NCBI RefSeq assembly: GCF_000143415.4
Contig: NW_003314287.1
Coordinates: forward strand, 1,750,951-1,814,950
Direction: 5' to 3'
DNA from: Selaginella moellendorffii
Taxonomy: Eukaryota; Plantae; Lycopodiophyta
DNA: 64,000 bases
The position numbers and the translations under genes were made by a program. The notes under the pieces are model-generated. The model saw only the letters and a program-made list of their open reading frames with translations. It made no database searches and was not told the origin of the DNA. Each line of letters opens with the position of its first letter. The first letter of the stretch is position 1. This document shows positions 12,901 to 58,232 of this stretch, piece by piece.

Positions 12901-13148
12901 GAAGAAAGCATAATAAATTATTATTGAAGATATTAATAACACTCTTCAAAATATATCAATTATATATTGTAATATATAGTACAAGATTTGTAAACAGTTT
13001 TTAAGTTAAAATAATGAAATTATAAAAAACTAATATAATAATAATAAGTAAATAAAAGTGAATTATTTTTTATCAATACTTCTAGTTCTTACTTTTTCAT
13101 ATATATATATATATATAATTTGAGAAATATAAATTTGATAAATATATT

Positions 13149-25449: not shown

Positions 25450-25793
25450 ATTACTTAATTTTTAAAATAAGAAAAAAAATTAATTTTTTTAATGATTTTA
25501 TAGTTGATAATGAGACTTCTTTTAAATCTCATTCCATGAATTTGAAGAAAGCATAATAAATTATTATTGAAGATATTAATAACACTCTTCAAAATATATC
25601 AATTATATATTGTAATATATAGTACAAGATTTGTAAACAGTTTTTAAGTTAAAATAATGAAATTATAAAAAACTAATATAATAATAATAAGTAAATAAAA
25701 GTGAATTATTTTTTATCAATATTTCTAGTTCTTACTTTTTCATATATATATATATATATATAATTTGAGAAATATAAATTTGATAAATATATT

Positions 25794-26240
25794 TTATAAA
25801 TTACAAGTTGAAAATAATGATTTGGATGAGTTTATATTTGATTTTGTATCTAGAAGTTCATCCCTTGCATGCTCCACTCGTAAAGACATGGACCCATCAA
25901 GTAAAGTGAGTATGCTTCCTGGGTCATAATAACTAAGACATGTATTCCATATATCTGTAACAGCTTCTGTAAAGTCATTAAATGTTGATTGGTGGTTCCA
26001 TCCAATTTGAAGGAAGCAACCCAAAGTTCCAACTCTTGCAGTATAAAATCCAGATGCATATGAACTCTGTACAAAATTATTCCATACCATAGTTACGCAT
26101 CTACAATATTCCTCAGGATTTGTTGCTCTTCTAAAAGTTCTAATGCATGTTTGAAAGGATTCATTGCAGGAGTAAGAGTGGGCTACTCTACAACAAATAA
26201 ATAAAAGATATATAAATACAAGAGATTTCCAGAATTTCAT
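25794..26240 (-). CDS. Small secreted cysteine-rich protein of unknown family (148 aa), copy 2
   Basis: Protein identical to copy 1; one synonymous substitution seen (TCT/TCC). Confidence 0.85.
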   Translation of the reverse strand: MKFWKSLVFIYLLFICCRVAHSYSCNESFQTCIRTFRRATNPEEYCRCVTMVWNNFVQSSYASGFYTARVGTLGCFLQIGWNHQSTFNDFTEAVTDIWNTCLSYYDPGSILTLLDGSMSLRVEHARDELLDTKSNINSSKSLFSTCNL

Positions 26241-37300: not shown

Positions 37301-40010
37301 TTGGGCCGGTAGTAATCAGGATAACCATCAATACAATAAATGGTTTCAACATTAAATTCTTTTGGATAATTCTTAGAGCATTTGTTAATTTCCATGCAAA
37401 GGCTTCTAGGATTTAAATTACCACATGGACCATGTATCATATGATTTATAATTATGTTATGCAATTCTGGTTCTAACAGTGGGTGTGGCAACTGTGCAGT
37501 GACAAATTCATCAACTGAGTCTCGATTTCTTATCTTATCTTCGCTTGATAACATTGCTAAGAAATGACAATGAGGCAAATCTCTTTTCTGGAATTCAATA
37601 ACATAAACATATGCGATGCACTTCCCAAAAATTCCTTTGATACTTATGTCATGTAGGAATTCTTTAAGCTTTAAGTTGAAAACTCTTGAAATAAGATTAG
37701 GTCGATCCTCAAGTGATTCATTCAGCTGTAAGTTTTGCACAATTTCAGGCCACTTTGGGTTGTATGTAAATGTAATAAATAAGTCAGGTTTTCCAAAATG
37801 TGTGACAATAGCAATAGCATCTTGATAATGTTGTTGCATTGCTCGTGGGCTACCAGGAAATGTAGAAGGAAAAATTACAAATTTTCCAGGTTCAGCATTA
37901 TTAGTAGCAGCTCTGTTGCTAACATAGTCCATAAGACCTGTGTAGTAATCCACTTTTAAGTGTTTTTGATAAATGCGAAAGAAATTAAGGTTGTTAGATT
38001 CAACCTTTACATAAACATCAACTATAAATTGTTGAGTGAGTTTCCCAGCATGTAGCAATTGATCATAAAGGAAAGAGTTGCCAATGCTATTTCGTTGAGA
38101 CAATCGATATGCATAGTACTGAAGTAGCGTTACATGCGACTCATTGTTATAGATTTTTTCATGCCAACCTTTATCACCAAATGGTAAAAGTAAAGGATAA
38201 ACCATAGGATCACAATTTTCATTAAGAATAGAGATTTTTATTGGCTGTGAGTTATATGGATGTATGCATATTTCTCTGTCAAGAGATGGCTCACCCTCAT
38301 CAATAGCGAAAACAATAGCAACATCATTAGTTTGTGGCAAATTATAACGATGTAGATTAGTACTTTCACTTCTAACAATCATGTAAACACCACGTTTTGG
38401 GGTTCCATTGCAAATTGAGCGATGTTGTTCTTGTGATTCAAGATTATACATCATTTGAAAAGCTTGTGCATACGGGTTTATTATTCTTAGCAAGTTATCT
38501 AATTGTAATAATAAATTAGAATCACAATTTGTGTTGAATGGGTTTTGCTTTCTAATATTTGTAGCCTCAAAAACATCAAGTATGTAAAGTTGTCCATATG
38601 ATGGTGGCACGTTAGCAGCAGGATATGCTAAAGCAATTTTGTGATAAATTTGACCATGTATTCTAAAGCAATATAGGCCTTTACCACTTAAATTATTAAT
38701 ATTAGCACCCATTGATGCAAAAGCCAAAGCACTGTTGAAATTTCTTATGTTAATTTTAAAATTGGAGTTTCTATTTTCATTAAAAAGCATACGCAATATA
38801 GTAGGTAAAGATGAAAGCTGGGGAAGGGAAACCTTTCCATTCTGGCAGCACATTGATTTTGGCTCATTTTCAAAATGTAATGCACCACAAAAGACACATA
38901 CGAATGACATATTTCCAATATTAAACAGTTGTATTGTATGGTCATTATAATTCTTTTGATGTGCTAATTTATAGATAGTATAACTGTGATGATTACATGT
39001 ATTTGTATTAGTTTCATTAGCATTTTCAAGGTTTATATTTGTATGACCTTCATCAGCATATGCTATGTTTGTATTAGCATTGTCAAGATTTGAAGTAATT
39101 TTTGCATTAGCATGTTCAAGGTCTAGATTAGTTTCTTCATTACCATTTGCAAGGTTGTTGTGAATATGATTATATGTGCTAGTGTCAATAGTTGGAGGCA
39201 AATGGTGACGTATGCCTCTTAATACTTCGTGAAGCTGAGGCATATTTGCTAGGGATGATAAATGAGATGAAATAACCTATCTAGTGTCAAAGCACTTATC
39301 TTAAAATTTTCAAAGATTCTAAGTAAAAGCCAGAACTCGCCTTCTTCTTACACTGGAAAAAAAATTTTAAAAAAATAAAAAACGAAGACTATACAATGAG
39401 AGCACAATCTGTACACACCTTAATCTGTAAACAAAAGAAACTAATCTAGCAACCAATAAAACCTAGACACAGGACTGGCACACCTTTTCCAGGGCGTGGT
39501 GAGCAACTGTGAGAGGTGGGGTTTGCAAGTTAGAGAACTCACCTTGGGCTTGTTCTCTCTTGCAAAAGGACAGCGACTACAAACTCTTTGATAGTTCTGG
39601 CTGTGAAGGCTGGCTCTGGCTTCAGCTCTGCCACTGGATAGCATCCACAAACCCAAATGAAGACGTTTCAAATTTTCACAGCACACAAAAATCCAAATTG
39701 TTGGGGTTGGGGGCCAAATTAGCGGCTGCCGGGCTGATGGTGAACACAGACCTTTGCAGGTGCCACTGATCGGGCAAGCAAGCGTTAGCTCAATTGTGGC
39801 AGGGCATCCAGGGCGAGCTAAGAAGAACGGGCACGGGGGCAGGACACCACTGGCACACGTGTCGGTGTGCCTTCTTCTCCCGCCCCACGCGGCTTGGCCG
39901 CCTCCCATTGGCCGGGAGCAAACATCAGAAAAATTTCTCGCGCAACCAAAAGCCCGGGCCTGGGATCCAACGGCCAGTGAGCCTCCCCACTATCGCTTTA
40001 TATGTATAGA
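34338..40010 (-). mobile_element. Full-length Helitron (~5.67 kb)
   Basis: The minus-strand 5' end TCTATACATATAAA is at 40010. The 3' end CTAG is at 34338-34341, with the hairpin CCCAGCA-AA-TGCTGGG at 34348-34363. Inserted between A and T with no TSD; encloses RepHel. Confidence 0.92.
34862..39243 (-). pseudogene. Helitron RepHel (HUH Rep + PIF1 helicase) broken into several ORFs
   Basis: Rep motifs GKPDLFITFT, VIEFQKRDLPHCH and KYLFQYIYKG. Helicase motifs GPGGTGKT, DEISM, GDFRQ and HGQLYVALSR. Breaks at ~36763, ~36565 and ~36088 (T run). Confidence 0.9.
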
Positions 40011-42709
40011 TATTATTATGTCAAGTTAAAAAATTTATCATTACTAAATCATTATCAAGTTAAGCAGAGTATCAAAATTTTTTGACAAATTTTATAAGGA
40101 ATCATTAATCATAGCAACTAATAATCACTTTTTCAACTTGCCATCATAACACTCAAACACTACATACCCTTTAGCTATATACTTGTCCTAGATAACAATA
40201 TATAGGAATATGGACAAAATAATGACTCAAATCTAGTTGTACAAAAACCAACTAACTATTTTAGATTAGTTATAATGAATATACTGATTAGGATTTCATT
40301 CTATGAAATATATATTATATAATTTATTCTTATTCTGATGTTATCACTAAATGGGAATATTACTATTTAAATTTTCATTGTATTATAAATATCAATATAA
40401 CTTATGGAAATGAAGAATTAAGCCGTATGGACAAGACATATAATGTAGTAAATTATAATTTGAATATTACAAAATATTATATTTTAATATATATACCTTG
40501 TTATTTGGTGGGAATTAAACTTGAGGGTGAGTGTGAGATATGCCTTTTAAAGAGTTATCAAACAATAACAATAATAGGCATAATTGGACTACCATAAAGT
40601 TAAAATAGAAAAGAAATAGTTTTCAAATTTTCCATTATACCATCTTTATTTAAATATATATATATATATATTCTATTTAGAGGATTATATAGAGAGAATA
40701 TGTTTTATTTACAATGAAACTATTGAATAATATAGTGTGTGACAAAGCTTGTACTAAATAGAATTTGTTGTTATAAAATCACATGTAGCACCAACATCAT
40801 ATTTATATAACTACAGAAAAAAAATTTATTGAAGAAACAAAGTGATAATAAATTTTATCATTTCTGCCTCTTCAAAAACTTAGGTAATGAGGTAATGCTA
40901 GATGGGTGTTAGGCTGTTAGGTGGGTAGTGTGCTAGGTGGGCAAGTGCATTGTTCGGTGGGCAATGAAAGCATTGAAACAAAAATGAAGAGACTGAAAGT
41001 GGAACTTGGATTAGAATCCCTGTAGATGAAAACTATGAGAAACACAGAAACACAAATGCTATAATTAAAAAGGAAAAGAAATGCATACCAAGTTCAAATC
41101 CAAGATTGATGCTTGAGAAGTGTTGGAAGATTTCCAACCTCAACACTCGGATGATAGGGTTTATCATGATAAGGCTAGTAATACAAATCACGAAAAACAA
41201 AGCTAAGTTGGTTGTTGTAAGAACTTCAGGTGGCATTTAAGCCATCTATTAATTAAATTATTATGTGAACTCTATGTCTTTATTATGGACTTTTACATGA
41301 AGTATGGTGGCTGAGGCTCAAGTGGTATTTAATAAAGCTGAAAAAGAAATTCCTTGCTAGTTTTATTGGACTCCATGATCCTTTATAGATCAACAAATAA
41401 ATGAGGCTTAGAATTTTTTAAATAAAATGAAGACTGTTTTTAAATCATTGAGAAAGAGGTAATTGTAATGATCATGGAGTTGAAATAAGAAATACGTTGA
41501 TTTTAACATGTTAAAATTCAAACAAGTTCATACAAAGTTAAAATATATTAATTTCTCATATGATACAGGTAATTACACATAATTTTGTGGCAAACTATCA
41601 GAAACCTAGCTTAGGATGTCATCACATGGGCCTTTTTCCCCCAAAAATGTGACTTCTGCCAAGTCAAAATGTTTAGATGTTACTGTTAACAAAAGTAGTA
41701 TTTAAGCACAATTGTAACCCTTATTTTATCATTTCTAGTTGGTAAATCGCACTCGTCTTCTTCACAGCCTGTTTTGGGAGCGTTGAAGGACTACTTGCAC
41801 CACACTGCTGCAACCCTGCAAAATTCGACTACTTCGACAATCACCAAACGCAGGTGGGTACCACGAAGGCTAAGAAAGATGTCGACATGGAACGGCCGAG
41901 AAAGAGAGCCAAGAAGCAGCAGCAGCCGGATGGAAGCAAGCCGGGTGGCGAGAATGCAAAGCTTCCTGTGGTGAGTCAAAACCCTATCTTGGTCAACGAC
42001 GACAAAACGTTGAGTCTCGAGAGTATGGAATTGCTCATGGAGACACAGCTCCAGCAGGTGTCGCACCGATGAGGGTCTCAAGGATTTCAACGTGGATGAT
42101 GGTGATGACAGCGATCTTTTGTTGGGTCTTAAGAAGAGGTTTTGCCAAGCAGCCAATCGATCAAGAATCTGCTCCTGTTGCGGTTGTGGAGGAAGAAAAT
42201 GAGTTTGCTTTGAAGGAATTGAACAAGAAATTGCAGCAGCAAAGGAGCAAAGGATGCTTCTTTGAAGGGAAGAGGTGAGGAAGATCAAGTTTAGAGATGA
42301 CCTGGTTCTCACCACAAAACACGGCAGAGCACAAAATCTTGTGTGCTGATCAGATGAAGAACTTCTATCAAAATCAATAGACAACTCAATTTGTTTCGAG
42401 TTTTAAGCAGAAGCAACTATTCTACTATAAAAATCAACAAATCAATAGAACAAAGGATTGTTCTTTAGAGTTTTAAAGAATTTCCTTCCAAACATGAGCA
42501 TCACCATTGTTGTCAATCAGAGAAAACAATGAAAACACAAGTTAGATTTCTCCAGTTAGAATCACGGGAGGAGCAAAACAATCCACCATTTTCACTGATT
42601 CATCACCACACCAGGAGCGGCGCCGCCTTAGCTAAACATACCTCCATTATTCCCAAAACGTAGCTCGATCAAATCCGATCTCTCCCTATTTCTTTCCTTC
42701 TACCAGCTG

Positions 42710-45577: not shown

Positions 45578-46722
45578 TCAGCACAGTTTCTCTGCGAGCC
45601 TCTGCACGGCGAGCGCGAGCTGATTGATCGCCGCCAGGAACGCAGCGTCGGCTTTCATCAGGAGCTCCAGCCTCTGCTTGTCCAGATGGATCCTCTGGTT
45701 CCTCCAGCGCTCCGAGTGCCACTGGTACGATCGAGAAGCCTCGAGTGTTTCCTTGGTTCTCTCCTCCACGAGCTCAAGTTCGTCTTCGTGCTTTGGCTGC
45801 TTTAGTGACTCTCGGCGCGATCGGCAAGCCTGGAGTGTCGGCCTGGGTCTCTCTCCTTTCTTCGCAAACTCTCCACTTTGGGCCTGCTCGATCGCTTGCT
45901 CGACCTGCGCCTTTAGAAACCCGTCGGCAACGTTGTCGTCCTCGAACCGGAGGCAGCCATCCGCGAATGCCACAACATTCTCGTCCATGGCCTCCTCGCT
46001 TCCAGCGTAGACAAGCTGCGGAAGACTGCAGTCCTCGACTTGTTCTGCTTCCTTTTCCTTTTCTTTGACAGCGTCTTCTTTCTCCAGCCTTGGTAGCAGC
46101 AGCAGCGGCTTCTCGTGGTAGAACTCATACGGCTCGATCACAGCTAGTGGCACTGGCTGACCACCCATGTCTTCTTCTCTCCACCTGGAACACCCTTCTT
46201 CGTTCCGAGGAAGCCGAACGATCTTGTTCGCAAATTGGTCGTAGAATCGTCGGTTGAAGGTCAGTGGGAGTGAATTCTCCTTCCGCTGGCACAGGCTCGT
46301 GTCGAAGTAGGAGACCCCGCTCGCGATTTCCCAGTCTCGGATGCTCCTGTATTTCTTCGAGATGTTCCTCCACTGGCGCAAAATCCCCTCCAAGCTGCGT
46401 TGCAGGCCATTCTCCCGGCACATCGCCAGAGCCCTGGCGCTGGAGGTTTTCTTCTTCATGACCGTGATGAGGATGAGAATTTCACGCGCCGTCCAGCGCG
46501 AGCTTCTCCTCCAAGGCGTTTGCCTCGCGCCTGCCACAAGAATCGATCGATCAGGAAGAACCCCAGCTTCAAGAATTTTCTGCCAAGGTGAGGATTTCTT
46601 GGCGATTATGAGCAATGCAGGGCAGGACCGAGCATGGCGTGGAGAAATCCGTGGCCTTTGAGCAGCAAGAACTCACCAGGGATGCGCCGCTCGCCTTCTT
46701 GTTCCTCGGCCTCCATCGCCAT
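45578..46722 (-). CDS. Trihelix (Myb/SANT-like, ASR3/SH4-like) transcription factor; 5' exon structure uncertain
   Basis: RWTAREILILI...CRENGLQRS....RQWRNISKKYRSIRDWE...SYF......RKENSLPLTF, then a C-terminal coiled coil. Candidate ATG at 46722 is followed by a GTGAG donor, but the acceptor phase is unresolved. Confidence 0.75.
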
Positions 46723-46879
46723 AAACCCTAAACCTCAGAGCCTTTTCCCCTTTCTTTTAAACTGGACGTTAGGGCTTGGTTTCCCTCCCAAACAACGGTT
46801 TCGTTTAGGGCATCCGGGCGCCAAGGGCTCGGATGATCCTCGGGACAGGTGATTTGGAGCTCGATCGGTAGCAGTAGCG

Positions 46880-49800
46880 ATGGATCCTGCTGGATCTCCC
46901 GATATTTCGGCTTCTCCCAGCAATGCCGCCGCTGCCGTGCCGCCAGAGAGCAATGCCGCGAGTTCTTCCTCTCCCGCCGCTGCTCTAGTCGCGGCCGAGG
47001 CCGAGCAAGCTCCTCCTCCTCCAAATCCAGCTCCAGGTATTGTCATCCAGGAGCCAGTACTGGCAGGGACTCACGATCACGAGGCTAGCACCTCTGGCGG
47101 GGGTGGAGATGATCAATGCGCTAGTCCATGGCTAGCGTCTCCAGCGTCCACCAGTGCTCTTCAGTCGCCTCCTCACTCTCCCGTGGAGAGAGCTTTGAAC
47201 GAGCTGGCTTTCAGTAGATTCCGGAACAATATGCGTGTTGAGGCCAGGCGATCGTCCGCTCGCCGGTCGCTGCTCGGTAGATTGGGAGCTCTCCCAGGCG
47301 ACGAGACGACGTTTTCTCAGCCAAAAGACCAACATCCTTGGCAGCTGCAAAATCCCATTCCACCGTTCCCGGGTCAGGTTTGCTTTTCTTTCTCCTTACT
47401 CGATGATAAGTTCTCCGTTTTTTTTACCTGCTGATGATACCTTGTTATTTAGTGACAACTTTCTGATAGACTCCTTTGATTTGCAGGATGGGATGGCTTA
47501 TCCACCGTCATCTGCGGTTTCCTCCGAGTAAGAACAGTAGAAAAATATAAAGAAGTTTGTCACGGCTTGCTGATCACTATTGAGTTTTTCATTGTAGAGG
47601 GTCAGTTGGCGAGAGGCCGTCTGTCATCGCACCACCTGGAGGGCAACCGATTTCTGCCTACCAACGTTTCGCTCGGGCTGAGTTTGCTGAGCACATCTAT
47701 GGAGTTGGACGTCTGGTTTGGAAAAGAATTTCCGTTGACGAGCTTATTCGGCACTCAAGGGTAACTCTTCTTCTTCTTCTCCTCTATTTCTGTTTCATTA
47801 TAGTGAGAGCGTTGTTTTGTTTTCTATCCAGGTTACCCTGCGTGCTCCATTATTAAGTAGCTTGGCTGCAAGTCCTGAGAGCATTAAAGCTGCGACTGTG
47901 TTTGCACGTAATTTCAACCTGGTGCTTGTAATCTTTCATTCCCGTTTCTTTGATTTTCTGATCAATCTGTCTGCAGTGCATGGCATTCTACAACCAGACT
48001 TTGGTTCTAATTTGTGTGCTTGGTTTCCTACAGATCTTCGGAACTATATGGAGGATCCTGCTGTTCCTGAGAACGTGCAGCCGAGTGAGATAAAATTTCT
48101 GGATACTCTTCGCTTGATGAAGGCATCGATCGCACAAAAGCTAGAGCCAGTTCGGCAAAAGCTGGAACCGGCCAAAGCTAAAGTGTCTGAACTTCTCAAT
48201 AAGATTGACAAGGTGCTCCGGACAAAGTTCTTTATCCAGCGAACGAGGCTTTATCATCTTCAGCAAATTTTGCTTATAGGCATCAAGTACAAGGCTGTAC
48301 GCGATGAGATTTATTGCCAGATTTGCAAACAGACTACTCTCAACCCAGCCAGGTAATGTGCTCCGTCGTTGTCTTTCGTTAAACTGCATCCGTGTGATCG
48401 CTTTCAGAGTAAGTGATGCAAGGGGCTGGCAAGCAATGGCAGTTTGTGCTGGCACGTTTCCACCCTCTGAGAAGTTCAGACCTGTACTGGAGGAGCATCT
48501 TAAACAAGTACGTGTTGTATTATGAAAACTCTTGTTGAAACTGTACAAGCCTTAATGGAACAGATTGTGGATGGAATTGTGGGAGGGATGCCCGATCAAG
48601 AGAAGGCTAGATCGATGGCACTATACTGCTTAAATCGGCTTCGAAAAATTTGCCGGGTTGGAGCACGGCAAGTAGCTCCGTCTTCAGAAGAGATTCTAGC
48701 TTCTGAGGTGACAAAGGTTCCTTTCACGTTTCCTTGTTGACAAACGTTCCCATTTCTACAGCACATGCATGTAACTTCTATTAACGTTGCCATTCCGGGG
48801 GGACTTGCTCAGGTAATATTCGGTGAACTAATAAGTAGAGCTGGTTCATTTGGTTACTTAAAGTGCTGTAGGTTGTGTCCATGGATTCAATGACCACTGG
48901 AGGAGAAGTCACTGCCGAAATTGCAGCAAGACTTGGTTTGCCAGATGTTGGCTTTTATGGTATCTTCATAGTAACAAATGGAGGTAGAGGCTTTTAAAGT
49001 TGTTACTTCGACAAATCGGTGATGGAAAGCTTTGCAGTTGAACGATTTGCTGGAACACATGGACTTCTGTCCGAGTCGTATACGGAATGGAACGTAGGCC
49101 CCTCCCCAGAACTGGAAGAAGAAGTGCAAGCATTCAGACGGACACGGCACTTCCTCGTGGACCACTGTGCTCAGTGCCTATACAACATGGACCCGGACTC
49201 GGTGCTGGGCAAAGACTTGAAACATGGCATCTCAGCTATGGAACATTTGAAGGAGAAGGAAATGCAGGAGAAAGCAGGCAGAGAAGCGAAAGAAACGGAT
49301 CCTGAGGAGGAGGAAATCAGGGATGCTGAGCTCAGGAGATTGTTTGCTGACGTGCATCTCCTATTCAAGAGGAACCGGTTTCCTGTTGAAGGCACTGCTT
49401 CATCAGATTCAGTCCGGGCATTCGAGTACGCTCAAGTACGATGATGGTCAATAAACCTTCCAGTAAACAAACTCAAAGTTCTTTCCTGTGCTGTTGTTTT
49501 CGCCTGACTTTCTCCTTACAGGCAACGTACGATGTGGTACACGGCCTATATGTCATCGAAGAAGCTGATGCGGTGATGCTAGCAGCACTACAACTGCGCG
49601 CTGAGCATGGCTCTTCTACTGATCTCGACAAGTATCTCACGTAAGATCCAAAGAAACATGTCTTTCTCTTTGAGTGTTTAAAATTTTTGTAACGCGCAGT
49701 GTACAGACTGTGGAGAACTATGGTCCCAAGGAGTACGTTACAGGCTATGAAAAGGCATGGCGGAGTGCCATTCTAAAGAAGGTCGCGACCTTGCCATGGG

Positions 49801-50354
49801 AAGTGGATGTCAACGTTTGCCGGAATGACTATTTGGCTTTTTTGCGCAGTCGATGTCCTCTCTATGGATCTTCCTGGTTCTACGTAGTGGTAACCACAAA
49901 CGTCTTGTGGAATGTTAACGTTTTGCTTTCTTCCTTCGTTTTGCAGCCTAAAGCTTGTCCACAGTTCCCTAGGGAACTGTACTTTGTGTTGAATCTTTCT
50001 GGTGTTCACTTCGTGGATATCCCACTCAAGGTATGCTTACGCTTCTGTTTTTAGTTTTAAAGGCTTTTGTCTTGGTTTCAGGAAAAATTATTGCATTTGA
50101 GATACATTGAGCTCTGCAGCTGGGGTTACTCGGACTCTTCCTTTTCTTTAGTTACCGGAAACATGTAAGAGAAATCTGGGATATCTAAATATCTTTTTTT
50201 TCCTTTTTATTTTGCAGGAGCTACAACATGGAGTTTCGTCTTGGAACCAGAAATGTAAGTCCCTCAAATCAACTGCTGATGACTTACACGCCCTTTGCAG
50301 GGAAAAGAAATCGCAAAAATCTTGCAGTACTTTGTGCAACACACAGAACTTTGA
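46880..50354 (+). CDS. Stand-alone MyTH4-FERM domain protein without a motor domain, multi-exon
   Basis: MyTH4: RDEIYCQICKQTTLNP, RGWQAMAVCAGTFPPS. FERM: LLFKRNRF, VVHGLYVIEEADAVMLAALQLRAEHG, PLYGSSWFYV, LSGVHFVD, YIELCSWG, TRNGKEIAKILQYFV. TGA follows at 50352-50354. Confidence 0.85.
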
Positions 50355-51254
50355 TCTCTGATTTTATTTTTGTTTTATATGTGTGAGTGCATAGAATACT
50401 GAAATGTATATATTTGATTATCCTAAATTTATATATAGGAGCTAGTGATTTGATTAAAACCAATCTAACAGTTATTAAAATTCTATTATATTAATAATAG
50501 TATAATAATTCCACATTTCGACCTCATATCATTCTTTCTTTTTAGAAGAATCGAAAGTAAAGTTTTTTTGTTAATGGGTGGAACATAAGATCAGTGGATC
50601 TAGTGCAACTTGTTTCTGATCATTTTGTATAAAGTAATTTCTAAAGGATCATTATTGTGAATCATAATTTCTAAAAACTCATTGTTATGAATGTGATTTT
50701 GAGTATTGAAAGATATTTATCAACAAATCCTTTTGAACACTCTCTCTTTACTATCATGATAGTAAAAAATTGGCTCAATTTAATTCCTTTATTAACCTTT
50801 TTTATGCTAGTAGAGTTAATTGGACATCTCAAATTTAGTTAGACTAGATGAGCATAAGGATGGAATTCTTAAATATTATTAGTTAAGCATATTTAACCTA
50901 ATAAAGAATTTTCATCTCATTATATCTTACACTAACTAATGACAAAACCTTCACAATATTAAATCTAGTCCCTCAATATTGCTATGTGATAATTTAATAT
51001 GTCCACTAAACACTTTACTATCATGCCTTATATATTAATCCTATTTTAGTTTATGTGGTATTTATAGTAAGTGTTTAGATATGCTAATGATGCATATCTA
51101 TAAAATATAAAGAGTGTAATGAACACTGTAGTGTTGTTCTTATGTCCCAATTCAACAGCAACATGTATATCTACAAACACATTGATTATAAAGTATAAAT
51201 AGATTCATAAGCTTAACAATTTAGTGTTATTCCATATTTAATAAATTTTTAAGC

Positions 51255-52450
51255 ATGTCCCAAAGATTAACTCTTGGGACTAGAGTGAAAGCCCAAAGCA
51301 TGCCCAAAGGGTTAAAATATTGGTCCATTAAAATTATGTTAGACATCATCTGATATTGTTTTATATATAGATGTTGGGTATAAAGAGCTGGTAATTATAA
51401 GGCATTTAAGTGCATATCATTTCATAGTGGAGTTTACTTCCAAATTCAAGTGCACTATATTTAGGATCAAATGAATTGTCTTAGTAATTCATATTTAACT
51501 TTTGTCAGAGTTTTTGACTTTAGTTGTATATGTAGAAACTTTTCTAGTAAATTTGAAATGATATATGTAAGATTAGTTGGATTGCACCATTCAGTAAAAA
51601 TGTTATATGTATATTTGGTTATTGATAGAAGCATGTATGCAGTTGATGAGATGGCAAAATGAAACTATGCTAATGATGTTCAGAATTTTTAAACGAGTGA
51701 ATCAAGAGGAAGAAACTTCTATTGGAGATATTACAAAAAAAACTAAGATTGAGTCAAAAGAGGAAGAGTTTGGGCACGATGCTATACTGTAGTATACAAT
51801 TCAAAATATTGAGTTTGATAATTTGCAAAAGAAAATTCACAAATTAAAGAAGAAGAACAAAAAGAGGAAGAGAGAAGCAAAAACAACTAAAGTAGTTACA
51901 TGCAAAAAACCAAATTCCTTTTCAAATTTTGAAAATGAGTTTTAAAGTTTAAGCCCTCAAAACCACTCAATTTTATAAGCATATCTGACAATCAAGTTTT
52001 AGAAGACTTGGTCTACAATATGGAAAACCATTTTATAATAGCAAACATAAATAATTGTAAGAGATTACTTACATGCAATCCTTTTTTATCGATCATACCA
52101 AAACTTAGTGGTGTGCACTATAAAAGGGTAGGCTTTTTATGTCGATCATCATTTAGATTCAATATATGCAAATAAAGCTTATGAGATTCATTAAGGAATT
52201 AGTGCTTGCATTAATTATGAGAAAAGTTTGAAGATAATAACTCATCTCCTCTTCTTCCTCATATTCTAAATTAACTAATTCATCAACCCCTTCAGTTTCA
52301 CCACCACTGTCTTCCCTCATGACATTAATACAATATCTCATCTTATGCTTGTTAGGATATTTTAAATACCTATATCCTACCTCTTTATAATGGAAGCAAT
52401 AATGCATATTACCTATTTTGCTAAGAGCAAGTTTTGCAGGTTATTGCTAC
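51255..52450. mobile_element. Highly degenerate retroelement remnant in an AT-rich tract
   Basis: GTGAAAGCCCAAAGC motif shared with family A LTRs (~51285). A decayed zinc-knuckle-like stretch (YCFHYKEVGY..LKYP) followed by an acidic spacer lies on the minus strand at 52159-52407. Confidence 0.4.
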
Positions 52451-53290
52451 TTGTACCCATTAGAAGGAATAGACGGCCTAAAATAGTGGCAATCACCGTG
52501 AAATGATAAAACTAATAGTATATATAATCCTTAAGCTTCTCATGGAAGAAATTTAGTTGGATGCAAAGATTGGTAACAAGAGTAAGAAGAGTTACACTAT
52601 GTGTTGTGAATATCACAATTAACTATATTTAATTGTTTAGTTGTAACCACATAGCATTGAGTAAATTCACTAATTGTTACTCAAAAGTCAAACAAAAAAA
52701 GAGTATATTACTTTGCCATGAAGATGAAAAAAAGAAGAAAAAAAACATAAGAGCATACATAGAAAAAGTACAAAAATAAAAGAGATAATGCAAAAGCTAA
52801 ATCTAAACCAAAAGCATAAATCCAAATGCTCCTTATAGACAATCAAAGTTACCTTTCAATTTCATATATAAAAATATGTATAGTCGATTAACTTAAAAAC
52901 CCTTGTTTATATACAAAAATAAATTTAAACCACTTTGATGGCTATCAAAATCCCACTATGTTAATTATAGCATTGTATTAATACACTTGGACCTCATAAA
53001 CAAGAATTTTAATATGCATAGTAAAATCTACATGAAGTCATAAATATACAACACAAAATCATAAGTGATGACCAATTGAACACTAACCATGCACTACCCT
53101 TCTTGCCTTAGGTAATATGAATATTTTACATCATACATAAATTTGGAATGTTTTTTTTTATGAAATCACTATCTTAAGTTTCATAATTGAAAATATTATT
53201 GTATGCAAGAGATATGTGAGCCCTAATTCAAATGCTTTTATTTCAATTATTTTAAATTTTATTTTATCTTGTTTGTCATTTCCTGTAAAT

Positions 53291-53737
53291 TTAACAAACA
53301 GTAAATAATATTAATGAAATATTTGTATATGAAATTGTCTCTAGAAGACCTTCCCTTTCATGCTCCACTCTTAATTCCATGGAGGCATCATCTAGTGAAA
53401 TTACACCTCCCTGGTCATAATATGCAAGACATGTATCCCATATATCAGTAGCAGCTTCTAAAAAGTCAGAATATGATAGTTCGTGATAATGTCTAATTCG
53501 AAAGAAGCAACCTAAAGTTCCAACTTGAGCAGTATATATCCCTGGTGTAAATGGATTAGATTCAAAATTATTCCATACAGATGATAAACACCTGCAAAAA
53601 TCATTAGGATTGGTTCCTATTTGAAATGATCGAATGCAACTTTGTACAGAACCAGCTGAGTAGGAGTGGGTTTGTTTACAATAACTAAAAATGAGCATAC
53701 CAATAAATAAAAAACTAAAAGATTGCAGAAAATCCAT
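53291..53737 (-). CDS. Small secreted cysteine-rich protein of unknown family (148 aa), copy 4
   Basis: ATG 53737 (MDFLQSFSFLFIGMLIFSYCKQTHS-YS). Same conserved motifs and six mature Cys; TATAAA at 53774-53779 (minus). Confidence 0.85.
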   Translation of the reverse strand: MDFLQSFSFLFIGMLIFSYCKQTHSYSAGSVQSCIRSFQIGTNPNDFCRCLSSVWNNFESNPFTPGIYTAQVGTLGCFFRIRHYHELSYSDFLEAATDIWDTCLAYYDQGGVISLDDASMELRVEHEREGLLETISYTNISLILFTVC

Positions 53738-54890
53738 TTTACTAATTGATAATTTTAAGCGAATGATTATAGGTTTATAAAATCCACCAATCAAACAAAG
53801 TTGTTGATAAAATTTTGTTTTTAACATAATAATAATTGCTATGGAGTTCAAAGAAATTAGTGTTTTTTATTTAGTGCTAGTATATCCTAGGATATTCTTC
53901 AAACTAATGGCTTTATACTGAACTTTTATAATTTTCTTTAGTAAATTTTTACCGTATGTTATGATTGTAGGCAGAAATCATTATGTGAGTTAATGAAAAA
54001 CTTAAGAAACTAAAAATTTGATTCAGACATTAACTTTTTCCTATACTTCCACACCATCACTTTCCATAGGCAAGGTGAGCTTAAGAGACTCTTATCTTTT
54101 CTTCTTGGTTTTCCTATGCTACTAGAATACTCAAAAAAGCTTCAAGAGTAGCATGTGAAATTTCTCATTTGCATCTTGTTAAATAGCTTTAGAACAAGTT
54201 CTTAGGTTAACAGTGGGCTATACAGAGTTATATGGAGAATTTCTTGAACCATCCTTAATCTCTTGCATTTTACATTGACCATAAAAATATAACTCTTATT
54301 AGCTGCTGCAATAAGAAGCAATATTGATCACTAAAATTTTGTTTTTTTTCTCTCATTTGCTTTGCCATTTTGATTTTTGATGTAACCTTTGATTAGAAAA
54401 TTCAAAGGGAAATTGATTTATGTTATCCTATGAATTCTTTTGTCACAAGCTATATATTGTGTCTTAACCAAATGCTTTTCTAAAGGTTTATGAAAGTATG
54501 ATAGTTTACTTGTATATTTAATCATAAAGTGAAATTTGAATATGAGCCAATCTACTAACGCCATGTACCTCACCACTTAAGAGGCTCTTACCCTGGGCAG
54601 TGCAATAGTTCATGGGTCTTTAACACTCTATGGTGGATGTCTTTGATGATCACCTTGTGTTTCATGGCTAATGCTTATGGCCTTTAATGTTTATGTATCA
54701 TGAAACAAACATAATTATGTTCATGTTGAAATGATAATGGAAAATATGGATCTTGTACAGGTAACTTGGTAAGCAAAGTGTGGGATTTAGTTGAATCGGC
54801 CAGCTAAGGTAAGCTTCACGTTTGTATGTTCATATTAAAATGTGAAGACGTGCCATTATTTCAGCACGCAAGATAAAAAAGGTGCGGACA

Positions 54891-56315
54891 ATGCCAGTCA
54901 TGGATTGTTGTTTGGGTCGGAAGAAAGACGGTATGGAGCTGCGCGTACTTCTTCTTGTCCTGGTAAGCTATGGCATCCACGCTCTCTCGGAACACCACCC
55001 AGGATATAGATTAGAGCTCAAGCAAGTAGACTCCTACGCTTCCGGCACGCTGACCAGAGCAAAGAGGCTCGAGAAGGCGCTCAAGACGAGTAAATCCCGA
55101 GCAAACTTCTTCTCGGATCGAAGGAAAACATCGAATAGTCCTACCAAATCAAACAACACTCGCGACCGCCACTCGCCGGAGCTGTCGAGCTCCATCTATC
55201 AGGCTGGCGGGGGAGAAGGCGAGTATATGATGGAGCTGAGCATTGGAACTCCTCCACAGCTGATCCCGGCCATGATCGACACAGGGAGTGATCTCGTTTG
55301 GCTCAAGTGTGATAATTGCGATCACTGCGACTTGGATCATCACGGCGAGACCATTTTTTTCTCCGATGCTTCCAGTTCATACAAGAAGCTCCCGTGCAAT
55401 AGCACGCACTGCAGTGGCATGTCCTCGGCTGGGATTGGTCCTCGCTGCGAGGAAACTTGCAAATACAAGTATGAGTACGGTGACGGTTCCAGGACTTCCG
55501 GAGATGTTGGCTCCGACAGGATCAGCTTCCGAAGCCATGGAGCCGGAGAGGATCACAGGAGTTTCTTTGATGGTTTCTTGTTTGGCTGTGGACGGAAGCT
55601 AAAAGGTGACTGGAACTTCACCCAGGGATTGATTGGTTTGGGACAAAAATCGCACTCGTTGATCCAGCAGCTCGGGGATAAACTTGGCTACAAATTCTCG
55701 TATTGTCTCGTGAGCTATGACAGCCCTCCAAGTGCAAAGAGCTTTCTCTTTCTGGGATCTTCCGCGGCTTTGAGAGGCCATGATGTTGTTTCCACCCCGA
55801 TTCTTCACGGTGATCACCTGGATCAAACCCTCTACTACGTAGATCTCCAAAGTATCACGGTCGGTGGCGTTCCAGTGGTGGTCTATGATAAAGAATCAGG
55901 TCACAACACTAGCGTTGGACCTTTTCTAGCGAACAAGACTGTTATTGACTCCGGAACCACGTACACCTTGCTAACTCCCCCGGTTTACGAAGCCATGAGG
56001 AAATCAATCGAGGAACAAGTGATACTTCCCACACTCGGCAATTCGGCGGGCCTTGATCTTTGCTTCAACAGTTCTGGGGACACGAGCTATGGCTTCCCAA
56101 GCGTCACCTTTTACTTCGCAAACCAGGTCCAGCTCGTTCTTCCATTCGAGAACATCTTCCAGGTGACGAGCAGAGATGTAGTGTGCTTGAGCATGGATTC
56201 TTCCGGTGGTGATCTTTCCATCATTGGAAACATGCAACAGCAAAACTTCCACATTCTCTATGATCTCGTTGCCTCTCAGATCTCCTTCCAGAGAGTTGAG
56301 TGTGAAAACCTCTAA
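54891..56315 (+). CDS. Secreted A1 aspartic protease, nepenthesin/CDR1-like (intronless; start could be 54933)
   Basis: Signal peptide, GEY.MELSIGTP, catalytic DTGS and DSGT, Cys-rich nepenthesin insert, IIGNMQQQNFHILYD. Confidence 0.95.
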   Translation: MPVMDCCLGRKKDGMELRVLLLVLVSYGIHALSEHHPGYRLELKQVDSYASGTLTRAKRLEKALKTSKSRANFFSDRRKTSNSPTKSNNTRDRHSPELSSSIYQAGGGEGEYMMELSIGTPPQLIPAMIDTGSDLVWLKCDNCDHCDLDHHGETIFFSDASSSYKKLPCNSTHCSGMSSAGIGPRCEETCKYKYEYGDGSRTSGDVGSDRISFRSHGAGEDHRSFFDGFLFGCGRKLKGDWNFTQGLIGLGQKSHSLIQQLGDKLGYKFSYCLVSYDSPPSAKSFLFLGSSAALRGHDVVSTPILHGDHLDQTLYYVDLQSITVGGVPVVVYDKESGHNTSVGPFLANKTVIDSGTTYTLLTPPVYEAMRKSIEEQVILPTLGNSAGLDLCFNSSGDTSYGFPSVTFYFANQVQLVLPFENIFQVTSRDVVCLSMDSSGGDLSIIGNMQQQNFHILYDLVASQISFQRVECENL

Positions 56316-56360: not shown

Positions 56361-58232
56361 ATGCATCTTCAATTTGGGAGAGACCTTGTTTCTTGGAATA
56401 TGCTGCTCTCTACTCAGGCAAAGGCTGGAAATATAAAACAATGTAGGATTATATTTGATAAGATGCCACTGCACGATATCGTGTCGTGGACTACGATGCT
56501 CAGCGCATTTGCCAAGAGTGGGCATTTTGTAGAATCAAAGGACTTTTTTGAGATGATGCCTTGTTGGAGCCTGGCATCCTACAATTCCATGCTTGCTCTT
56601 GGAGACTTGCATGAAGTTAAAGATTTTTTAAAATCAATGCCACAAAGGAATCTCATCTCTTATAACGCATTACTTCACAAATGCTCCCAGTGTGGTAACG
56701 CAAACCAAGCAAAATCTCTTCTAGATGCCATGCCCGAAAGAGATTCCGTGTCATGGACATCCATGATGACAGCATATGCTCGTACAGGGCAAATGTCCAG
56801 GGCTGAAGAAACGTTCGCTGCAATGCCGGAGAAGAATCTTGTGTCATGGAATGCTATACTATCTCAATATGCCCAAGGTGGGCATATTCGGGATATGGAG
56901 CGCATTTTCGAGGAGATGCCGGCTAGGAATATCATTTCCTGGAACACAGTTGTGGGTGCGTATTCTCAACACGATATAGAGAAAGGCGCAATGTTTTTTC
57001 AGCATATGCCTTATAGAAATGTGGTATCTTGGAACTCAATGCTTTCGGGATATGCCCACAATGGGCATATCCACCAAGCCGTTCGCTTCTTTGAGTGTAT
57101 ACCCGAACTAGACATTGTGTCGGTGACAATATTCCTTCCCGTGTGTGGGAATATTCCGCAGGCTCACTCCTTGTTTGAAAAGATCCCCGAGCACAACCTT
57201 CCATTGTGCTGCGCGATGCTCTCGGCATATTCCCATTTTGGGCGATTGGACGGAGTGTGGTCATTTTTTTCATCGTTGCCATGGCGAAACCTGGCCTGCT
57301 GGAATGCCGTACTGTCTAGCCACATAAGAAATGGATGCCCGTACGAAACTATGGAGATTTTTACCACCCAAATGCCAGAACATGATAGTTCATCATCAAC
57401 TTCAGTGATGTTAGCACATATCCAAACTGGAAACATCGAAAACGCAAAGTTTGTATTTGACACAATGCCTGAGAGAACACCAGCTGCTTGGAATGCTATG
57501 ATAGAAGCATTCTTTTCAATTGGGGATATTTCCTCCGCTACAAAGATGTTTTCCTCAATGCCGCACAGGAGCCCAAGCAGCTGGAACACAATGCTATCTG
57601 CTTATGCCCAAGCCGGGCATATTGATATTGCTAAAGGGATTTTTGCGTCAACTCCACAACGCAATGTTGTTTCATGGACTTCAATGATAGCTGCAAATGC
57701 CCAAGTCGGGGATCTTGTCGAAGTGAGAAAACTGTTCGAGTCAATGCCAGAAGGGGATCCAGTAGCATGGAGCTCTATTCTTTCGGCATATGCCCAGAGA
57801 GGGGAATCTTTAGCAACCATTGCCACCTTCACAGATATGAAACTTTTCTACATGCCAGATAAAAATTGTTTCTTGGCAGCTTTGCTCGCTTGCACCCACG
57901 AAGGTAGAGTCGAGTCCGCGAAAGAATACGTTGTTGGCATGGCTGTGGACTTTGGCGTGGATCCAGCGATGGAGCACTACTGCTGCCTTGTTGATGTCTT
58001 GGCTAGAGCTGGACAGCTTGGGAGCGCGCTGGAGCTTGCCGCGAGCATGCCTTTCGAGGCTGGAGCTTGGCAGTGGAGAAAGCTACTGGCAGCTTGTAGA
58101 AGCTTTGGCGATGTCGGCTATGGCATTCAAGCAGCCAAGTACTTTCTTTCGTCTAGGCCGCGAGACTCAACAGCTTATGTGTTTCTTTCGAGCCTTGTGA
58201 ACGATCCAATTCAGTCCAAGGTTTCGATCTGA
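56361..58232 (+). CDS. PLS-class PPR protein with E domain (623 aa), possibly 5'-truncated
   Basis: S-type repeats (RN.VSWN.ML), HYCCLVDVLARAG, WRKLLAAC, AYVFLS. Confidence 0.9.
   Translation: MHLQFGRDLVSWNMLLSTQAKAGNIKQCRIIFDKMPLHDIVSWTTMLSAFAKSGHFVESKDFFEMMPCWSLASYNSMLALGDLHEVKDFLKSMPQRNLISYNALLHKCSQCGNANQAKSLLDAMPERDSVSWTSMMTAYARTGQMSRAEETFAAMPEKNLVSWNAILSQYAQGGHIRDMERIFEEMPARNIISWNTVVGAYSQHDIEKGAMFFQHMPYRNVVSWNSMLSGYAHNGHIHQAVRFFECIPELDIVSVTIFLPVCGNIPQAHSLFEKIPEHNLPLCCAMLSAYSHFGRLDGVWSFFSSLPWRNLACWNAVLSSHIRNGCPYETMEIFTTQMPEHDSSSSTSVMLAHIQTGNIENAKFVFDTMPERTPAAWNAMIEAFFSIGDISSATKMFSSMPHRSPSSWNTMLSAYAQAGHIDIAKGIFASTPQRNVVSWTSMIAANAQVGDLVEVRKLFESMPEGDPVAWSSILSAYAQRGESLATIATFTDMKLFYMPDKNCFLAALLACTHEGRVESAKEYVVGMAVDFGVDPAMEHYCCLVDVLARAGQLGSALELAASMPFEAGAWQWRKLLAACRSFGDVGYGIQAAKYFLSSRPRDSTAYVFLSSLVNDPIQSKVSI

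What the first reader, a model, noticed from the sequence alone, without database searches (positions are those of the whole stretch)
46880..50354. Motorless MyTH4-FERM protein in a land plant
Seen in the sequence: spliced exons give a disordered N-terminus, a MyTH4 domain and all three FERM lobes. A stop follows immediately (…TRNGKEIAKILQYFVQHTEL*), and only AT-rich non-coding DNA lies downstream. Established knowledge: in angiosperms the MyTH4-FERM tandem is known essentially only from the kinesin KCBP/ZWICHEL, where a coiled coil and motor follow it. This protein is highly diverged from KCBP and has an acidic insertion in the FERM N-lobe. Inference: it may be an undescribed microtubule/actin/membrane adaptor, analogous to animal PLEKHH/MAX-1 or a detached myosin tail. 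It might be retained in seed-free plants, possibly for flagellated sperm.
Basis: partly seen in the sequence, partly recalled or inferred. Interest (0 to 1): 0.75.

Follow-up and report, generated by a model that had tools for sequence, protein, structure and literature searches.

The report
Motorless MyTH4-FERM gene in spikemoss
This spikemoss gene encodes a cytoskeleton-linker module (MyTH4-FERM) with no motor attached; in plants that module is described only on the kinesin KCBP. A liverwort has the same gene, so the family is old and unstudied, but the RNA sampled so far is mostly spliced in ways that cannot make the full protein.

Summary
A 16-exon, all GT-AG model (46880-50354, +) gives an 822-aa protein with a disordered N-terminus, one MyTH4 domain, three FERM lobes and a stop. 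The window is Selaginella moellendorffii. The gene is already deposited as hypothetical proteins SELMODRAFT_415350 and 414494, one per haplotype. I found no paper on it.

- **No motor:** none lies in the window. The next + strand genes are an aspartic protease and a PPR gene.
- **Not decaying:** both haplotypes keep the frame, and folded parts show synonymous changes almost only.
- **Not a recent KCBP piece:** Riccia fluitans has a motorless orthologue (30% identity overall, 34% over MyTH4) with at least eight shared intron positions. Three sets of unlabelled contigs carry relatives. No search returned KCBP. I could not align against KCBP directly.
- **RNA:** 11 of 15 introns are confirmed exactly. 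The other four sites show stop-introducing forms: an alternative donor, skipping of conserved exon 4, an alternative acceptor and a downstream intron-10 donor. No read covers exon 4.

Most likely it is a passive microtubule-to-partner adaptor made only in some cells. The sperm idea is untested. New member of a known kind; moderate interest.

The parts
46880..50354 (+). Coding span of the motorless MyTH4-FERM gene (16 exons, 822 aa; SELMODRAFT_415350 haplotype)
   Evidence: Model built. Matches P0018. Stranded RNA reads indicate + strand RNA.
46880..47377 (+). Exon 1: start codon and S/P/A-rich disordered N-terminus
   Evidence: An X1 contig starts at 46869. The X5 loose end supports the donor after 47377. 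No Pfam family.
47373..47374 (+). Alternative exon-1 donor, 5 nt upstream; shifts the frame and gives a stop in exon 3
   Evidence: Joint 47371>47486 (cut +1) in the X1 contig; translation.
47487..47527 (+). Exon 2
   Evidence: The downstream intron 47528-47597 is confirmed (X1 and one X11 read).
47598..47760 (+). Exon 3: start of the MyTH4 N-terminal extension
   Evidence: Aligns with Riccia P0012 residues 148-159.
47832..47907 (+). Exon 4 (76 nt): encodes ...APLL... to ...VFA, including the first core MyTH4 helix. Needed to keep the frame but skipped in the RNA seen.
   Evidence: Joint 47759>48033 in the X1 contig and one X11 read; zero depth over 47836-48002 in all 4 runs. Its homologue is a separate exon ending ...VFA in liverwort contig L006:128-193. 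Modelled helix pLDDT is 84-90.
48034..48352 (+). Exon 5: MyTH4, with a Selaginella-specific insertion of about 59 aa (48066-48242), then the conserved ...RDEIYCQICKQTT... helix
   Evidence: Pfam MyTH4 34.8 bits on this exon alone. The insertion is absent from Riccia and has low pLDDT.
48408..48507 (+). Exon 6: MyTH4 core with the family signature ...RGWQAMA...
   Evidence: Pfam 34.8 bits. Introns on both sides confirmed. The signature is shared with L002-L007.
48564..48707 (+). Exon 7: end of MyTH4, including a basic helix (48615-48671, ...NRLRKICRVGAR...)
   Evidence: Pfam 26.3 bits. Donor after 48707 seen in X1, X5, X11 and X12. Basic residues are kept in the orthologues.
48762..48812 (+). 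Exon 8: start of FERM lobe F1
48864..48871 (+). Eight extra bases when the alternative acceptor at 48864 is used; frameshift and a stop within about 10 codons
   Evidence: Joint 48810>48862 (cut +2) in X1 and one X11 read. The X5 loose end supports the productive acceptor at 48872.
48872..48983 (+). Exon 9: FERM F1 (ubiquitin-like lobe)
   Evidence: RA_2 19 bits on the exon and 25.5 bits on the whole protein. Strands in the model.
49038..49435 (+). Exon 10: end of F1, charged insertion (49091-49345, net acidic), start of F2
   Evidence: The upstream intron is confirmed in X1, X5 and X12.
49436..49462 (+). Stretch retained when the downstream donor (GT at 49463) is used; carries an in-frame TGA after two codons (...YAQVR*)
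   Evidence: X5 contig 49405-49462 joined to 49522. The X1 contig uses the same donor on the other haplotype, which has an 11-nt deletion. RefSeq model P0016 ends there. No run showed the productive donor after 49435.
49522..49640 (+). Exon 11: FERM F2
   Evidence: FERM_M 22 bits on the exon. Intron 49641-49699 confirmed in X1, X5 and X11.
49700..49889 (+). Exon 12: end of F2 and start of F3
49947..50030 (+). Exon 13: F3 (PTB/PH-like lobe)
   Evidence: Homologous exons in L002 and L007.
50082..50164 (+). Exon 14: F3; 59% identical to the Riccia exon
   Evidence: L002:14959-15045. Introns on both sides confirmed in X1 and X12.
50218..50254 (+). Exon 15: F3
50301..50354 (+). Exon 16: C-terminal F3 helix and the stop codon (50352-50354)
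   Evidence: No joint or loose end leads further downstream.
46723..46731 (+). Telo-box AAACCCTAA in the short spacer shared with the divergent minus-strand gene
   Evidence: Its function was not tested.
50355..54881 (.). AT-rich spacer (29% G+C) with no motor exons, up to the next gene
   Evidence: The other haplotype has the same layout.

Best explanation
This is a genuine single-copy nuclear gene of Selaginella moellendorffii, present on both haplotypes. Its conserved reading frame encodes a protein of about 822 aa. The protein has a fast-evolving disordered N-terminus of about 190 residues and one complete MyTH4-FERM cassette, with no motor, coiled coil or other domain.

It belongs to a small, old land-plant family that also occurs in the liverwort Riccia fluitans. 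It is neither the KCBP gene nor a recent piece of it.

Inferred mechanism: a passive linker or adaptor.
- The MyTH4 helical bundle keeps a conserved basic helix. By analogy it would bind the acidic tails of tubulin, as in myosin X and KCBP.
- The FERM lobes would hold a peptide from a membrane or scaffold partner, or possibly actin.
- The disordered N-terminus and the two lineage-specific insertions would be regulatory.

In the RNA sampled, most transcripts carry splice choices that introduce premature stops. Full-length protein is therefore probably made only in particular cells or conditions. Which cells is unknown.

Shown: the gene, its architecture, absence of a motor, the orthologue, sequence constraint and the splice forms. 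Inferred: the binding partners, the adaptor role and regulation through splicing.
For: Architecture:
- Pfam MyTH4 110 bits, FERM_M 38 bits, F3/PTB 31 bits, and no motor.
- PDB sequence hits to myosin VIIa, VIIb, X and DdMyo7 cassettes, E down to 9e-25.
- AlphaFold2 pTM 0.68, with lobes F2 and F3 at about pLDDT 90. Foldseek top 15 matches are all MyTH4-FERM cassettes. Atlas fold matches TM 0.52-0.60.

No motor:
- The neighbours are an aspartic protease and a PPR gene on both haplotypes.
- No motor motifs in the window, L001, L002 or L007, apart from one isolated kinesin-type match in L001 about 5 kb upstream of the gene, which I take as chance.
- No splice joint beyond the stop.

Real gene under constraint:
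- The haplotypes are 97.5% identical. All CDS indels are multiples of 3.
- Outside the N-terminus there are 5 nonsynonymous and 7 synonymous differences, against a 3.2:1 neutral expectation (binomial p = 0.011). Four of the 5 lie in the low-confidence insertion.

Old family:
- Riccia P0012 is 34% identical over MyTH4 and 30% over 527 aligned residues (BLASTP E 2e-57).
- F3 exons lie beyond its truncated model.
- At least 8 intron positions are shared.
- Contigs L003-L007 carry the same GWQAMA signature and no motor.
- A quick tree groups these sequences together, support 0.88.

Expression: + strand RNA, with 11 of 15 introns confirmed.

Analogy for function: the MyTH4 basic patch of myosin X binds tubulin tails (PMC3155308). 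In KCBP, MyTH4 binds microtubules and FERM binds F-actin (PMC4574192).
Against: - No transcript carrying the whole frame was seen.
- Exon 4 had zero depth in four runs.
- The productive intron-10 donor was not seen in any run.
- The dominant assembled contig carries four stop-introducing events.
- The RefSeq models are truncated to 372 and 558 aa and start at Met265.
- Read depth was very low (25 and 10 raw reads laid), and the tissues are unknown.
- The constraint test rests on only 12 differences.
- Only one annotated orthologue was found. Annotated proteomes of other bryophytes and ferns gave nothing in searches limited by shared words and by length.
- The one exhaustive search used a poorly conserved exon.
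- No KCBP sequence could be compared.
- No binding or localisation data exist.
Confidence: 0.6

Rival explanations
1. A transcribed relic. The frame is still open, but in S. moellendorffii the gene no longer makes full-length protein. Splicing has drifted to non-productive sites and the locus is at an early stage of pseudogenisation.
For: There are four stop-introducing splice events. Exon 4 is never covered. The productive intron-10 donor is unseen in X1 and X5, that is, for both alleles. The RefSeq models are truncated. The N-terminal exon evolves about neutrally, with 8 nonsynonymous and 3 synonymous differences.
Against: Sixteen exons stay open on both haplotypes with only in-frame indels. 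Folded parts show synonymous differences almost only. The X5 contigs use the productive junctions at introns 1 and 8. F3 remains 45-59% identical to distant orthologues. Sampling was tiny and tissues are unknown.
Confidence: 0.17
2. The real product is the shorter protein of the RefSeq models. It starts at Met265 (MEDP...), so it lacks the N-terminus and the first MyTH4 helices. It has either a full FERM domain (558 aa) or ends after F1 (372 aa).
For: P0016 and P0017 are RNA-guided NCBI models with exactly these limits. Skipping of exon 4 is seen in two independent studies.
Against: The exon-4-skipped mRNA still contains exon 1 (the X1 contig starts at 46869). The AUG at 46880 would then open a reading frame of about 210-260 codons ahead of Met265. 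That makes downstream initiation unlikely. Exon 4 encodes the first core helix of the bundle at pLDDT 84-90 (helix naming from PMC3155308). Exon 4 is conserved as an exon in liverworts.
Confidence: 0.1
3. A recent duplicate fragment of the KCBP kinesin tail that has lost its motor and is decaying.
For: KCBP is the only MyTH4-FERM protein described in plants (PMC4574192). I could not align against KCBP directly.
Against: An orthologous motorless gene with shared introns exists in a liverwort. In the uncapped word search, all 2970 word-sharing candidates of 453-1442 aa were scored and no KCBP reached E 1e-3. The exhaustive HMMER scan with exon 5 gave MyTH4-RhoGAP proteins and other MyTH4-FERM proteins, one with an IQ motif, not KCBP. 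Both haplotypes are intact and constrained.
Confidence: 0.03
4. Contamination or a recent horizontal transfer from a protist carrying a MyTH4-FERM myosin.
For: The best non-plant matches are MyTH4-FERM proteins outside plants: bird myosin VIIA fragments, and P0013, a myosin with a MyTH4-FERM tail from an intron-poor contig of unknown organism.
Against: The gene lies between typical plant genes on both haplotypes of a 2-Mb scaffold. It has 15 short plant-type introns. Riccia carries it on a 57-Mb chromosome record. Intron positions are shared between the two plants.
Confidence: 0.02

Closest known systems
KCBP / ZWICHEL (plant kinesin-14 with an N-terminal MyTH4-FERM tandem)
   Same: It is the only other MyTH4-FERM carrier described in plants. 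The domain order, MyTH4 then FERM, is the same. In KCBP, MyTH4 binds microtubules and FERM binds F-actin (PMC4574192). That is the working model borrowed here.
   Different: This protein has no coiled coil, kinesin motor or calmodulin-binding end. The cassette sits at the C-terminus behind a disordered region. No search returned KCBP as a relative. Direct identity to KCBP was not measured.
MyTH4-FERM tails of myosin VII, X, XV and Dictyostelium Myo7
   Same: These are the best sequence and fold matches: 3pvl E 9e-25 and Foldseek E down to 5e-25. They share the MyTH4 bundle with an N-terminal extension and a three-lobed FERM. Insertion hot spots fall at the same sites.
   Different: There is no myosin head, IQ motif or SH3 domain. 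Identity is only about 15-26%. The insertions here are lineage-specific (residues 271-329 and 520-604).
Animal PLEKHH1-3 / MAX-1 (motorless PH-MyTH4-FERM proteins)
   Same: They are motorless proteins whose main module is a C-terminal MyTH4-FERM cassette. PLEKHH1 and PLEKHH3 clusters appear among the Atlas fold neighbours, TM 0.52-0.53.
   Different: No PH domains or coiled coil were found here. There is no sign of common descent beyond the cassette.
MyTH4-FERM-only protein clusters in the ESM Atlas (about 600-720 aa; the commonest labelled phylum of the top cluster is Oomycota)
   Same: They have the same bare architecture and similar length. They were the top feature hits, at 0.96.
   Different: Those clusters are unstudied and may include fragments of longer proteins. 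The relationship was not tested by alignment.

Membership tests
MyTH4-FERM (MF) cassette proteins | MyTH4 domain (helical, VHS-like bundle) | tested here: met
   PF00784 at 110.2 bits against a cut-off of 27. Three exon pieces hit profile positions 1-30, 34-64 and 71-105. Helices modelled at pLDDT 85-96.
MyTH4-FERM (MF) cassette proteins | Complete FERM domain (F1 ubiquitin-like, F2 helical, F3 PTB/PH-like) directly after MyTH4 | tested here: met
   FERM_M 38.4 bits (cut-off 23.8); IRS/PTB 31.3 bits (cut-off 22); RA_2 25.5 bits (cut-off 27, just under). The model shows beta-alpha F1, helical F2 and a seven-strand plus helix F3.
MyTH4-FERM (MF) cassette proteins | Overall fold like solved MyTH4-FERM supramodules | tested here: met
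   The Foldseek top 15 are all MyTH4-FERM cassettes, E 1e-19 to 5e-25. TM is only 0.35-0.53 and rmsd is high, because of the insertions or the lobe arrangement.
MyTH4-FERM (MF) cassette proteins | Basic MyTH4 surface that binds tubulin tails (myosin X R1643, K1647, K1650) | tested here: inconclusive
   A conserved basic helix is present (residues 417-435, five R/K) and its basic residues are kept in the orthologues. I could not map it residue by residue onto the myosin X patch (PMC3155308). No binding test was possible.
KCBP (kinesin-14 with MF tail) | C-terminal kinesin motor domain | tested here: not met
   No PF00225 hit. No P-loop, SSRSH or DLAGSE motif in any frame of the window. The stop codon is in the last exon, with no further joints.
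KCBP (kinesin-14 with MF tail) | Coiled-coil stalk and calmodulin-binding helix | tested here: not met
   The protein ends 87 residues into F3 with the F3 helix. Nothing follows that could hold these elements.
KCBP (kinesin-14 with MF tail) | MF sequence clusters with KCBP MF in a phylogeny | not testable with these tools
   No KCBP sequence could be fetched by reference. The only evidence is indirect: KCBP was absent.
Class VII/X/XV myosins | Myosin head and IQ motifs upstream of the MF | tested here: not met
   No PF00063 or IQ hit. No GESGAGKT or switch-2 motif in the window. A minus-strand gene lies directly upstream. The RefSeq names 'unconventional myosin-VIIa' and 'myosin-I heavy chain' are similarity labels only.
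PLEKHH / MAX-1 | PH domains before the MF | tested here: not met
   No Pfam family in residues 1-200.

The most novel reading that the evidence does not exclude
The family is the surviving free-standing descendant, or sister, of the MyTH4-FERM gene whose fusion to a kinesin-14 created KCBP. It was kept only in plants with swimming sperm. Productive splicing (exon 4 included, upstream intron-10 donor used) would be switched on in spermatogenesis. There the protein would tie a microtubule array, such as the spline, to a membrane or organelle partner. Elsewhere the mRNA would be made deliberately unproductive.
Probability: 0.1. Interest if true: 0.8.

Novelty: new member of a known kind. Interest (0 to 1): 0.45.

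Why it matters
Plant cell biology treats the MyTH4-FERM tandem as a peculiarity of one kinesin, KCBP, and as otherwise a myosin feature outside plants (PMC4574192). A second, motorless MyTH4-FERM lineage shared by a lycophyte and a liverwort shows that early land plants had a free-standing version of this linker.

This gives a concrete outgroup or candidate donor for asking how KCBP acquired its tail. It also offers a new candidate microtubule-to-partner adaptor to test in Riccia fluitans, the one species with an annotated orthologue.

The mostly unproductive splicing is a caution for annotation, since the RefSeq models are truncated and misnamed. It may also be an example of expression gated by splicing.

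The matter is modest in scope. The architecture is known elsewhere, the gene is already deposited, and no function is shown.

Tried and rejected
1. The exhaustive representative search used exon 5 alone, because a spliced protein could not be passed by reference before P0001 was known. That exon carries a Selaginella-specific insertion. The search found only the protein itself plus weak MyTH4 hits, so it says little about orthologues.

My guess is that low-complexity words caused this. Only the MyTH4-restricted search was uncapped and informative.

3. The metagenome scan returned mostly protist myosins with MF tails. It gave no KCBP-like locus and no further family member among the 80 loci kept.

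4. Direct comparison with KCBP was not possible. No tool returned a KCBP sequence, and typing one from memory would be unreliable.

5. Literature: no paper holds SELMODRAFT_414494, the SRA run ids, or MyTH4 together with Selaginella in a relevant sense. The supplements of the sperm-gene profiling preprint do not mention MyTH4 or FERM. PMC1176440 is not held.

6. The organisms behind L003-L008 and P0013 could not be identified.

7. Residue-level mapping of the myosin X tubulin-binding lysines was not achieved.

8. The query-anchored FastTree trees are rough. Rows were partial, branches long, KCBP absent and rows with low coverage dropped. I use them only to say that the plant sequences group together.

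9. Rejected readings: motor exons downstream, an upstream myosin head, and contamination.
Full report
**Organism and locus.** The window is 97.5% identical over about 18 kb to Selaginella moellendorffii scaffold GL377589.1 (L001). It has the same gene order: the MF gene, a TAXi-type aspartic protease, then a PPR gene. It is the allelic haplotype. Its own public protein is P0018 (EFJ23835.1, SELMODRAFT_415350, 825 aa). The allele is P0001 (EFJ24419.1, SELMODRAFT_414494, 824 aa).

**Checking the observation.** From the raw sequence I built a 16-exon model, 46880-50354 on the + strand. Every intron is GT-AG and 46-126 nt long. It gives 822 aa ending ...YFVQHTEL and a TGA. It differs from P0018 only by three residues, because the deposited model uses a donor 9 nt further on at exon 7. 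RNA in all four runs supports my junction.
- Single exons already hit Pfam MyTH4 three times in register, and FERM_M once.
- On the full-length allele, Pfam gives MyTH4 110 bits, FERM_M 38 bits, the PTB-like F3 lobe 31 bits and the F1 lobe (RA_2) 25.5 bits. It gives no motor.
- Solved-structure sequence hits are the MyTH4-FERM cassettes of myosin VIIa, VIIb, X and Dictyostelium Myo7.
- An AlphaFold2 model of residues 195-825 (27-row alignment; pLDDT 75.5, pTM 0.68) shows a helical MyTH4, a beta-alpha F1, a helical F2 and a beta-sandwich-plus-helix F3. F2 and F3 are at about pLDDT 90.
- Its 15 best Foldseek matches in the PDB are all MyTH4-FERM cassettes.
- Two stretches are of low confidence and lineage-specific. 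One is an insertion of about 59 residues in MyTH4 (residues 271-329), absent from the liverwort orthologue. The other is a charged, net-acidic stretch of about 85 residues at the F1/F2 junction (residues 520-604).

The one correction is that the acidic insertion lies between lobes F1 and F2 rather than inside the N-lobe.

**No motor.** After the stop come 4.5 kb of 29% G+C DNA, then the aspartic protease gene (54882-56315) and the PPR gene (56361-58232). Directly upstream is a divergently transcribed minus-strand gene whose intron is seen in RNA. No kinesin or myosin signature motif occurs in any frame of the window. RNA shows no joint or loose end beyond the last exon. The orthologous loci in Riccia (24.6 kb) and the 15-kb contig L007 are also free of motor motifs.

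**Relatives.**
- An uncapped word search with the MyTH4 part found one annotated orthologue, Riccia fluitans R1flu_015344 (P0012, 590 aa; 34% identity over 89% of the region). BLASTP gives 30% identity over 527 residues, E 2e-57.
- The two share long exact motifs, including ...VFAHL..YM.D, ...RDEIYCQICKQTT.NP and ...ARGWQAMA.
- The Riccia model is cut short. Exons for lobe F3 lie just downstream, one of them 59% identical to Selaginella exon 14.
- Exon boundaries coincide at eight or more places: after ...HSR/...SKK...VFA...NP.R...HL.Q...A.E, the small F1 exon...Y.Q and ...SWF.V..
- Short exon-sized proteins from the representative search led to three further sets of unlabelled genomic contigs with the same signature. 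L005/L006 are 55-74% identical to Riccia. L003/L004 and the 15-kb L007 are about 45% identical to both, have a complete F3 and sit beside a plant-type LpxB exon. L008 is a more distant AT-rich contig without the signature.
- In a rough query-anchored tree these sequences group together, support 0.88. They fall apart from myosin VII-type cassettes, near the tail of P0013, a myosin from a contig of unknown organism.
- KCBP never appeared. It was absent from the exhaustive HMMER scan with exon 5, from the word searches and from the Atlas neighbours.
- I could not fetch a KCBP sequence, so "highly diverged from KCBP" remains indirect.

**Is the gene alive?** Between the two haplotypes the coding sequence has 23 substitutions and three indels, all multiples of three.
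- Overall pN/pS is 0.40.
- Exon 1 (the disordered N-terminus) looks neutral, with 8 nonsynonymous and 3 synonymous differences.
- The rest has 5 nonsynonymous and 7 synonymous differences, against a neutral 3.2:1 expectation (binomial p = 0.011). Four of the five replacements fall in the low-confidence insertion.
- Together with conservation against a liverwort, this argues for a constrained gene, not a decaying fragment.

**RNA.** Two contig sets (X1 and X5, from different studies) and two raw stranded RNA runs were laid on 46500-51500.
- The gene is transcribed from the + strand at low level. Eleven of the 15 model introns are confirmed to the base.
- At four places other forms appear, and each one introduces a premature stop:
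  - a donor 5 nt upstream in exon 1 (X1), whereas X5 supports the productive donor;
  - skipping of exon 4 (X1 and one X11 read), with zero depth on exon 4 in all four runs;
  - an acceptor 8 nt upstream of exon 9 (X1 and one X11 read), whereas X5 supports the productive acceptor;
  - a donor 27 nt downstream in intron 10, which brings in TGA after two codons. It is seen for both alleles, and the productive donor was not seen at all.
- NCBI's RNA-guided RefSeq models mirror this. Both start at Met265, downstream of the skipped exon. One ends at that TGA. They are named "unconventional myosin-VIIa" (372 aa) and "myosin-I heavy chain" (558 aa) although they have no motor.
- Exon 4 encodes the first core helix of the MyTH4 bundle (pLDDT 84-90; helix naming after PMC3155308). 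It is a separate conserved exon in liverworts. Its loss cannot give a folded MyTH4.
- Depth was very low (25 and 10 raw reads) and the tissues are unknown. I read this as mostly unproductive splicing in the samples available, not as proof that no full-length mRNA exists.

**How it most likely works.** Steps shown here are the gene, the bare MF architecture, the constraint and the old family. Steps inferred by analogy are the following.
- MyTH4 would contact microtubules through a basic surface. In myosin X, R1643, K1647 and K1650 bind tubulin tails (PMC3155308). In KCBP, MyTH4 binds microtubules (PMC4574192). Here a helix with five R/K (residues 417-435) keeps its basic residues across the family.
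- The FERM lobes would bind a partner peptide, or actin as reported for KCBP.
- Without a motor or a dimerising coiled coil, the protein would act as a passive tether or adaptor.
- The disordered N-terminus, the insertions and perhaps the splice choices would regulate it.
- The sperm hypothesis is compatible with the taxa found but has no direct support. Annotated proteomes of other sperm-bearing plants yielded no orthologue within the limits of the searches.

**Novelty and verdict.** The architecture is known elsewhere: PLEKHH/MAX-1, and MF-only clusters in oomycetes and animals. The gene has been in GenBank since the genome release. I found no paper that mentions it, and the field describes the tandem in plants as a KCBP peculiarity (PMC4574192). 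It is a new member of a known kind and of moderate interest. Its main value is as an outgroup or candidate donor for the KCBP tail and as a testable new cytoskeletal adaptor in Riccia. The productive transcript still has to be demonstrated.

Noticed in passing
window 45578-46833 (- strand): A divergently transcribed neighbour with a weak Myb/SANT-like (trihelix-type) match (PF13837, 14.8 bits). A minus-strand intron at 46530-46675 is seen in RNA at higher depth than the MF gene. The two genes share a spacer of under 300 bp that contains a telo-box, AAACCCTAA, at 46723-46731.
   Followed up: partly
RefSeq proteins P0016 (XP_024535724.1) and P0017 (XP_024534856.1): NCBI names these motorless, N-terminally truncated models 'unconventional myosin-VIIa' and 'myosin-I heavy chain'. 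The names come from tail similarity and are misleading.
   Followed up: yes
L002:14236-15045 (Riccia fluitans CM092409.1): The deposited Riccia model R1flu_015344 stops after ...SWFSVK plus a short wrong tail, but F3 exons follow. A second ...RLPQEF... stretch next to the real ...RLPDEFF... exon looks like a remnant of an exon duplication.
   Followed up: partly
L007:9323-10818 (JGI metagenome contig Ga0590115_0012676): Between the F1 and F2 exons of this family member lie two long open frames (240 and 237 aa) without any Pfam family. They may be a much larger insertion at the same F1/F2 site. An LpxB exon (46.6 bits) at 641-829 suggests a green-lineage host.
   Followed up: partly
window 12000-14000, 24000-26000, 36000-42000, 50355-54881: Blocks of 26-32% G+C alternate with genic DNA of 45-55% G+C. 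Their nature (old transposons or plain spacers) was not examined. The block at 33-42 kb is only 88-92% identical between the haplotypes, against 97.5% elsewhere.
   Followed up: no
window 47641-47643 and 49450-49460: Haplotype indels are seen directly in RNA contigs. One is a 3-nt deletion that removes one Gln. The other is an 11-nt deletion inside the retained part of intron 10. The X1 contig mixes features of both haplotypes, so it is probably an assembly across alleles.
   Followed up: yes
L089 (Logan SRR22388065 contig, 12.5 kb): An intron-poor eukaryote of unknown identity carries a myosin with a long helical stalk and a single MF tail (P0013). That tail was the closest non-plant MyTH4 match (43% identity over the core).
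   Followed up: partly
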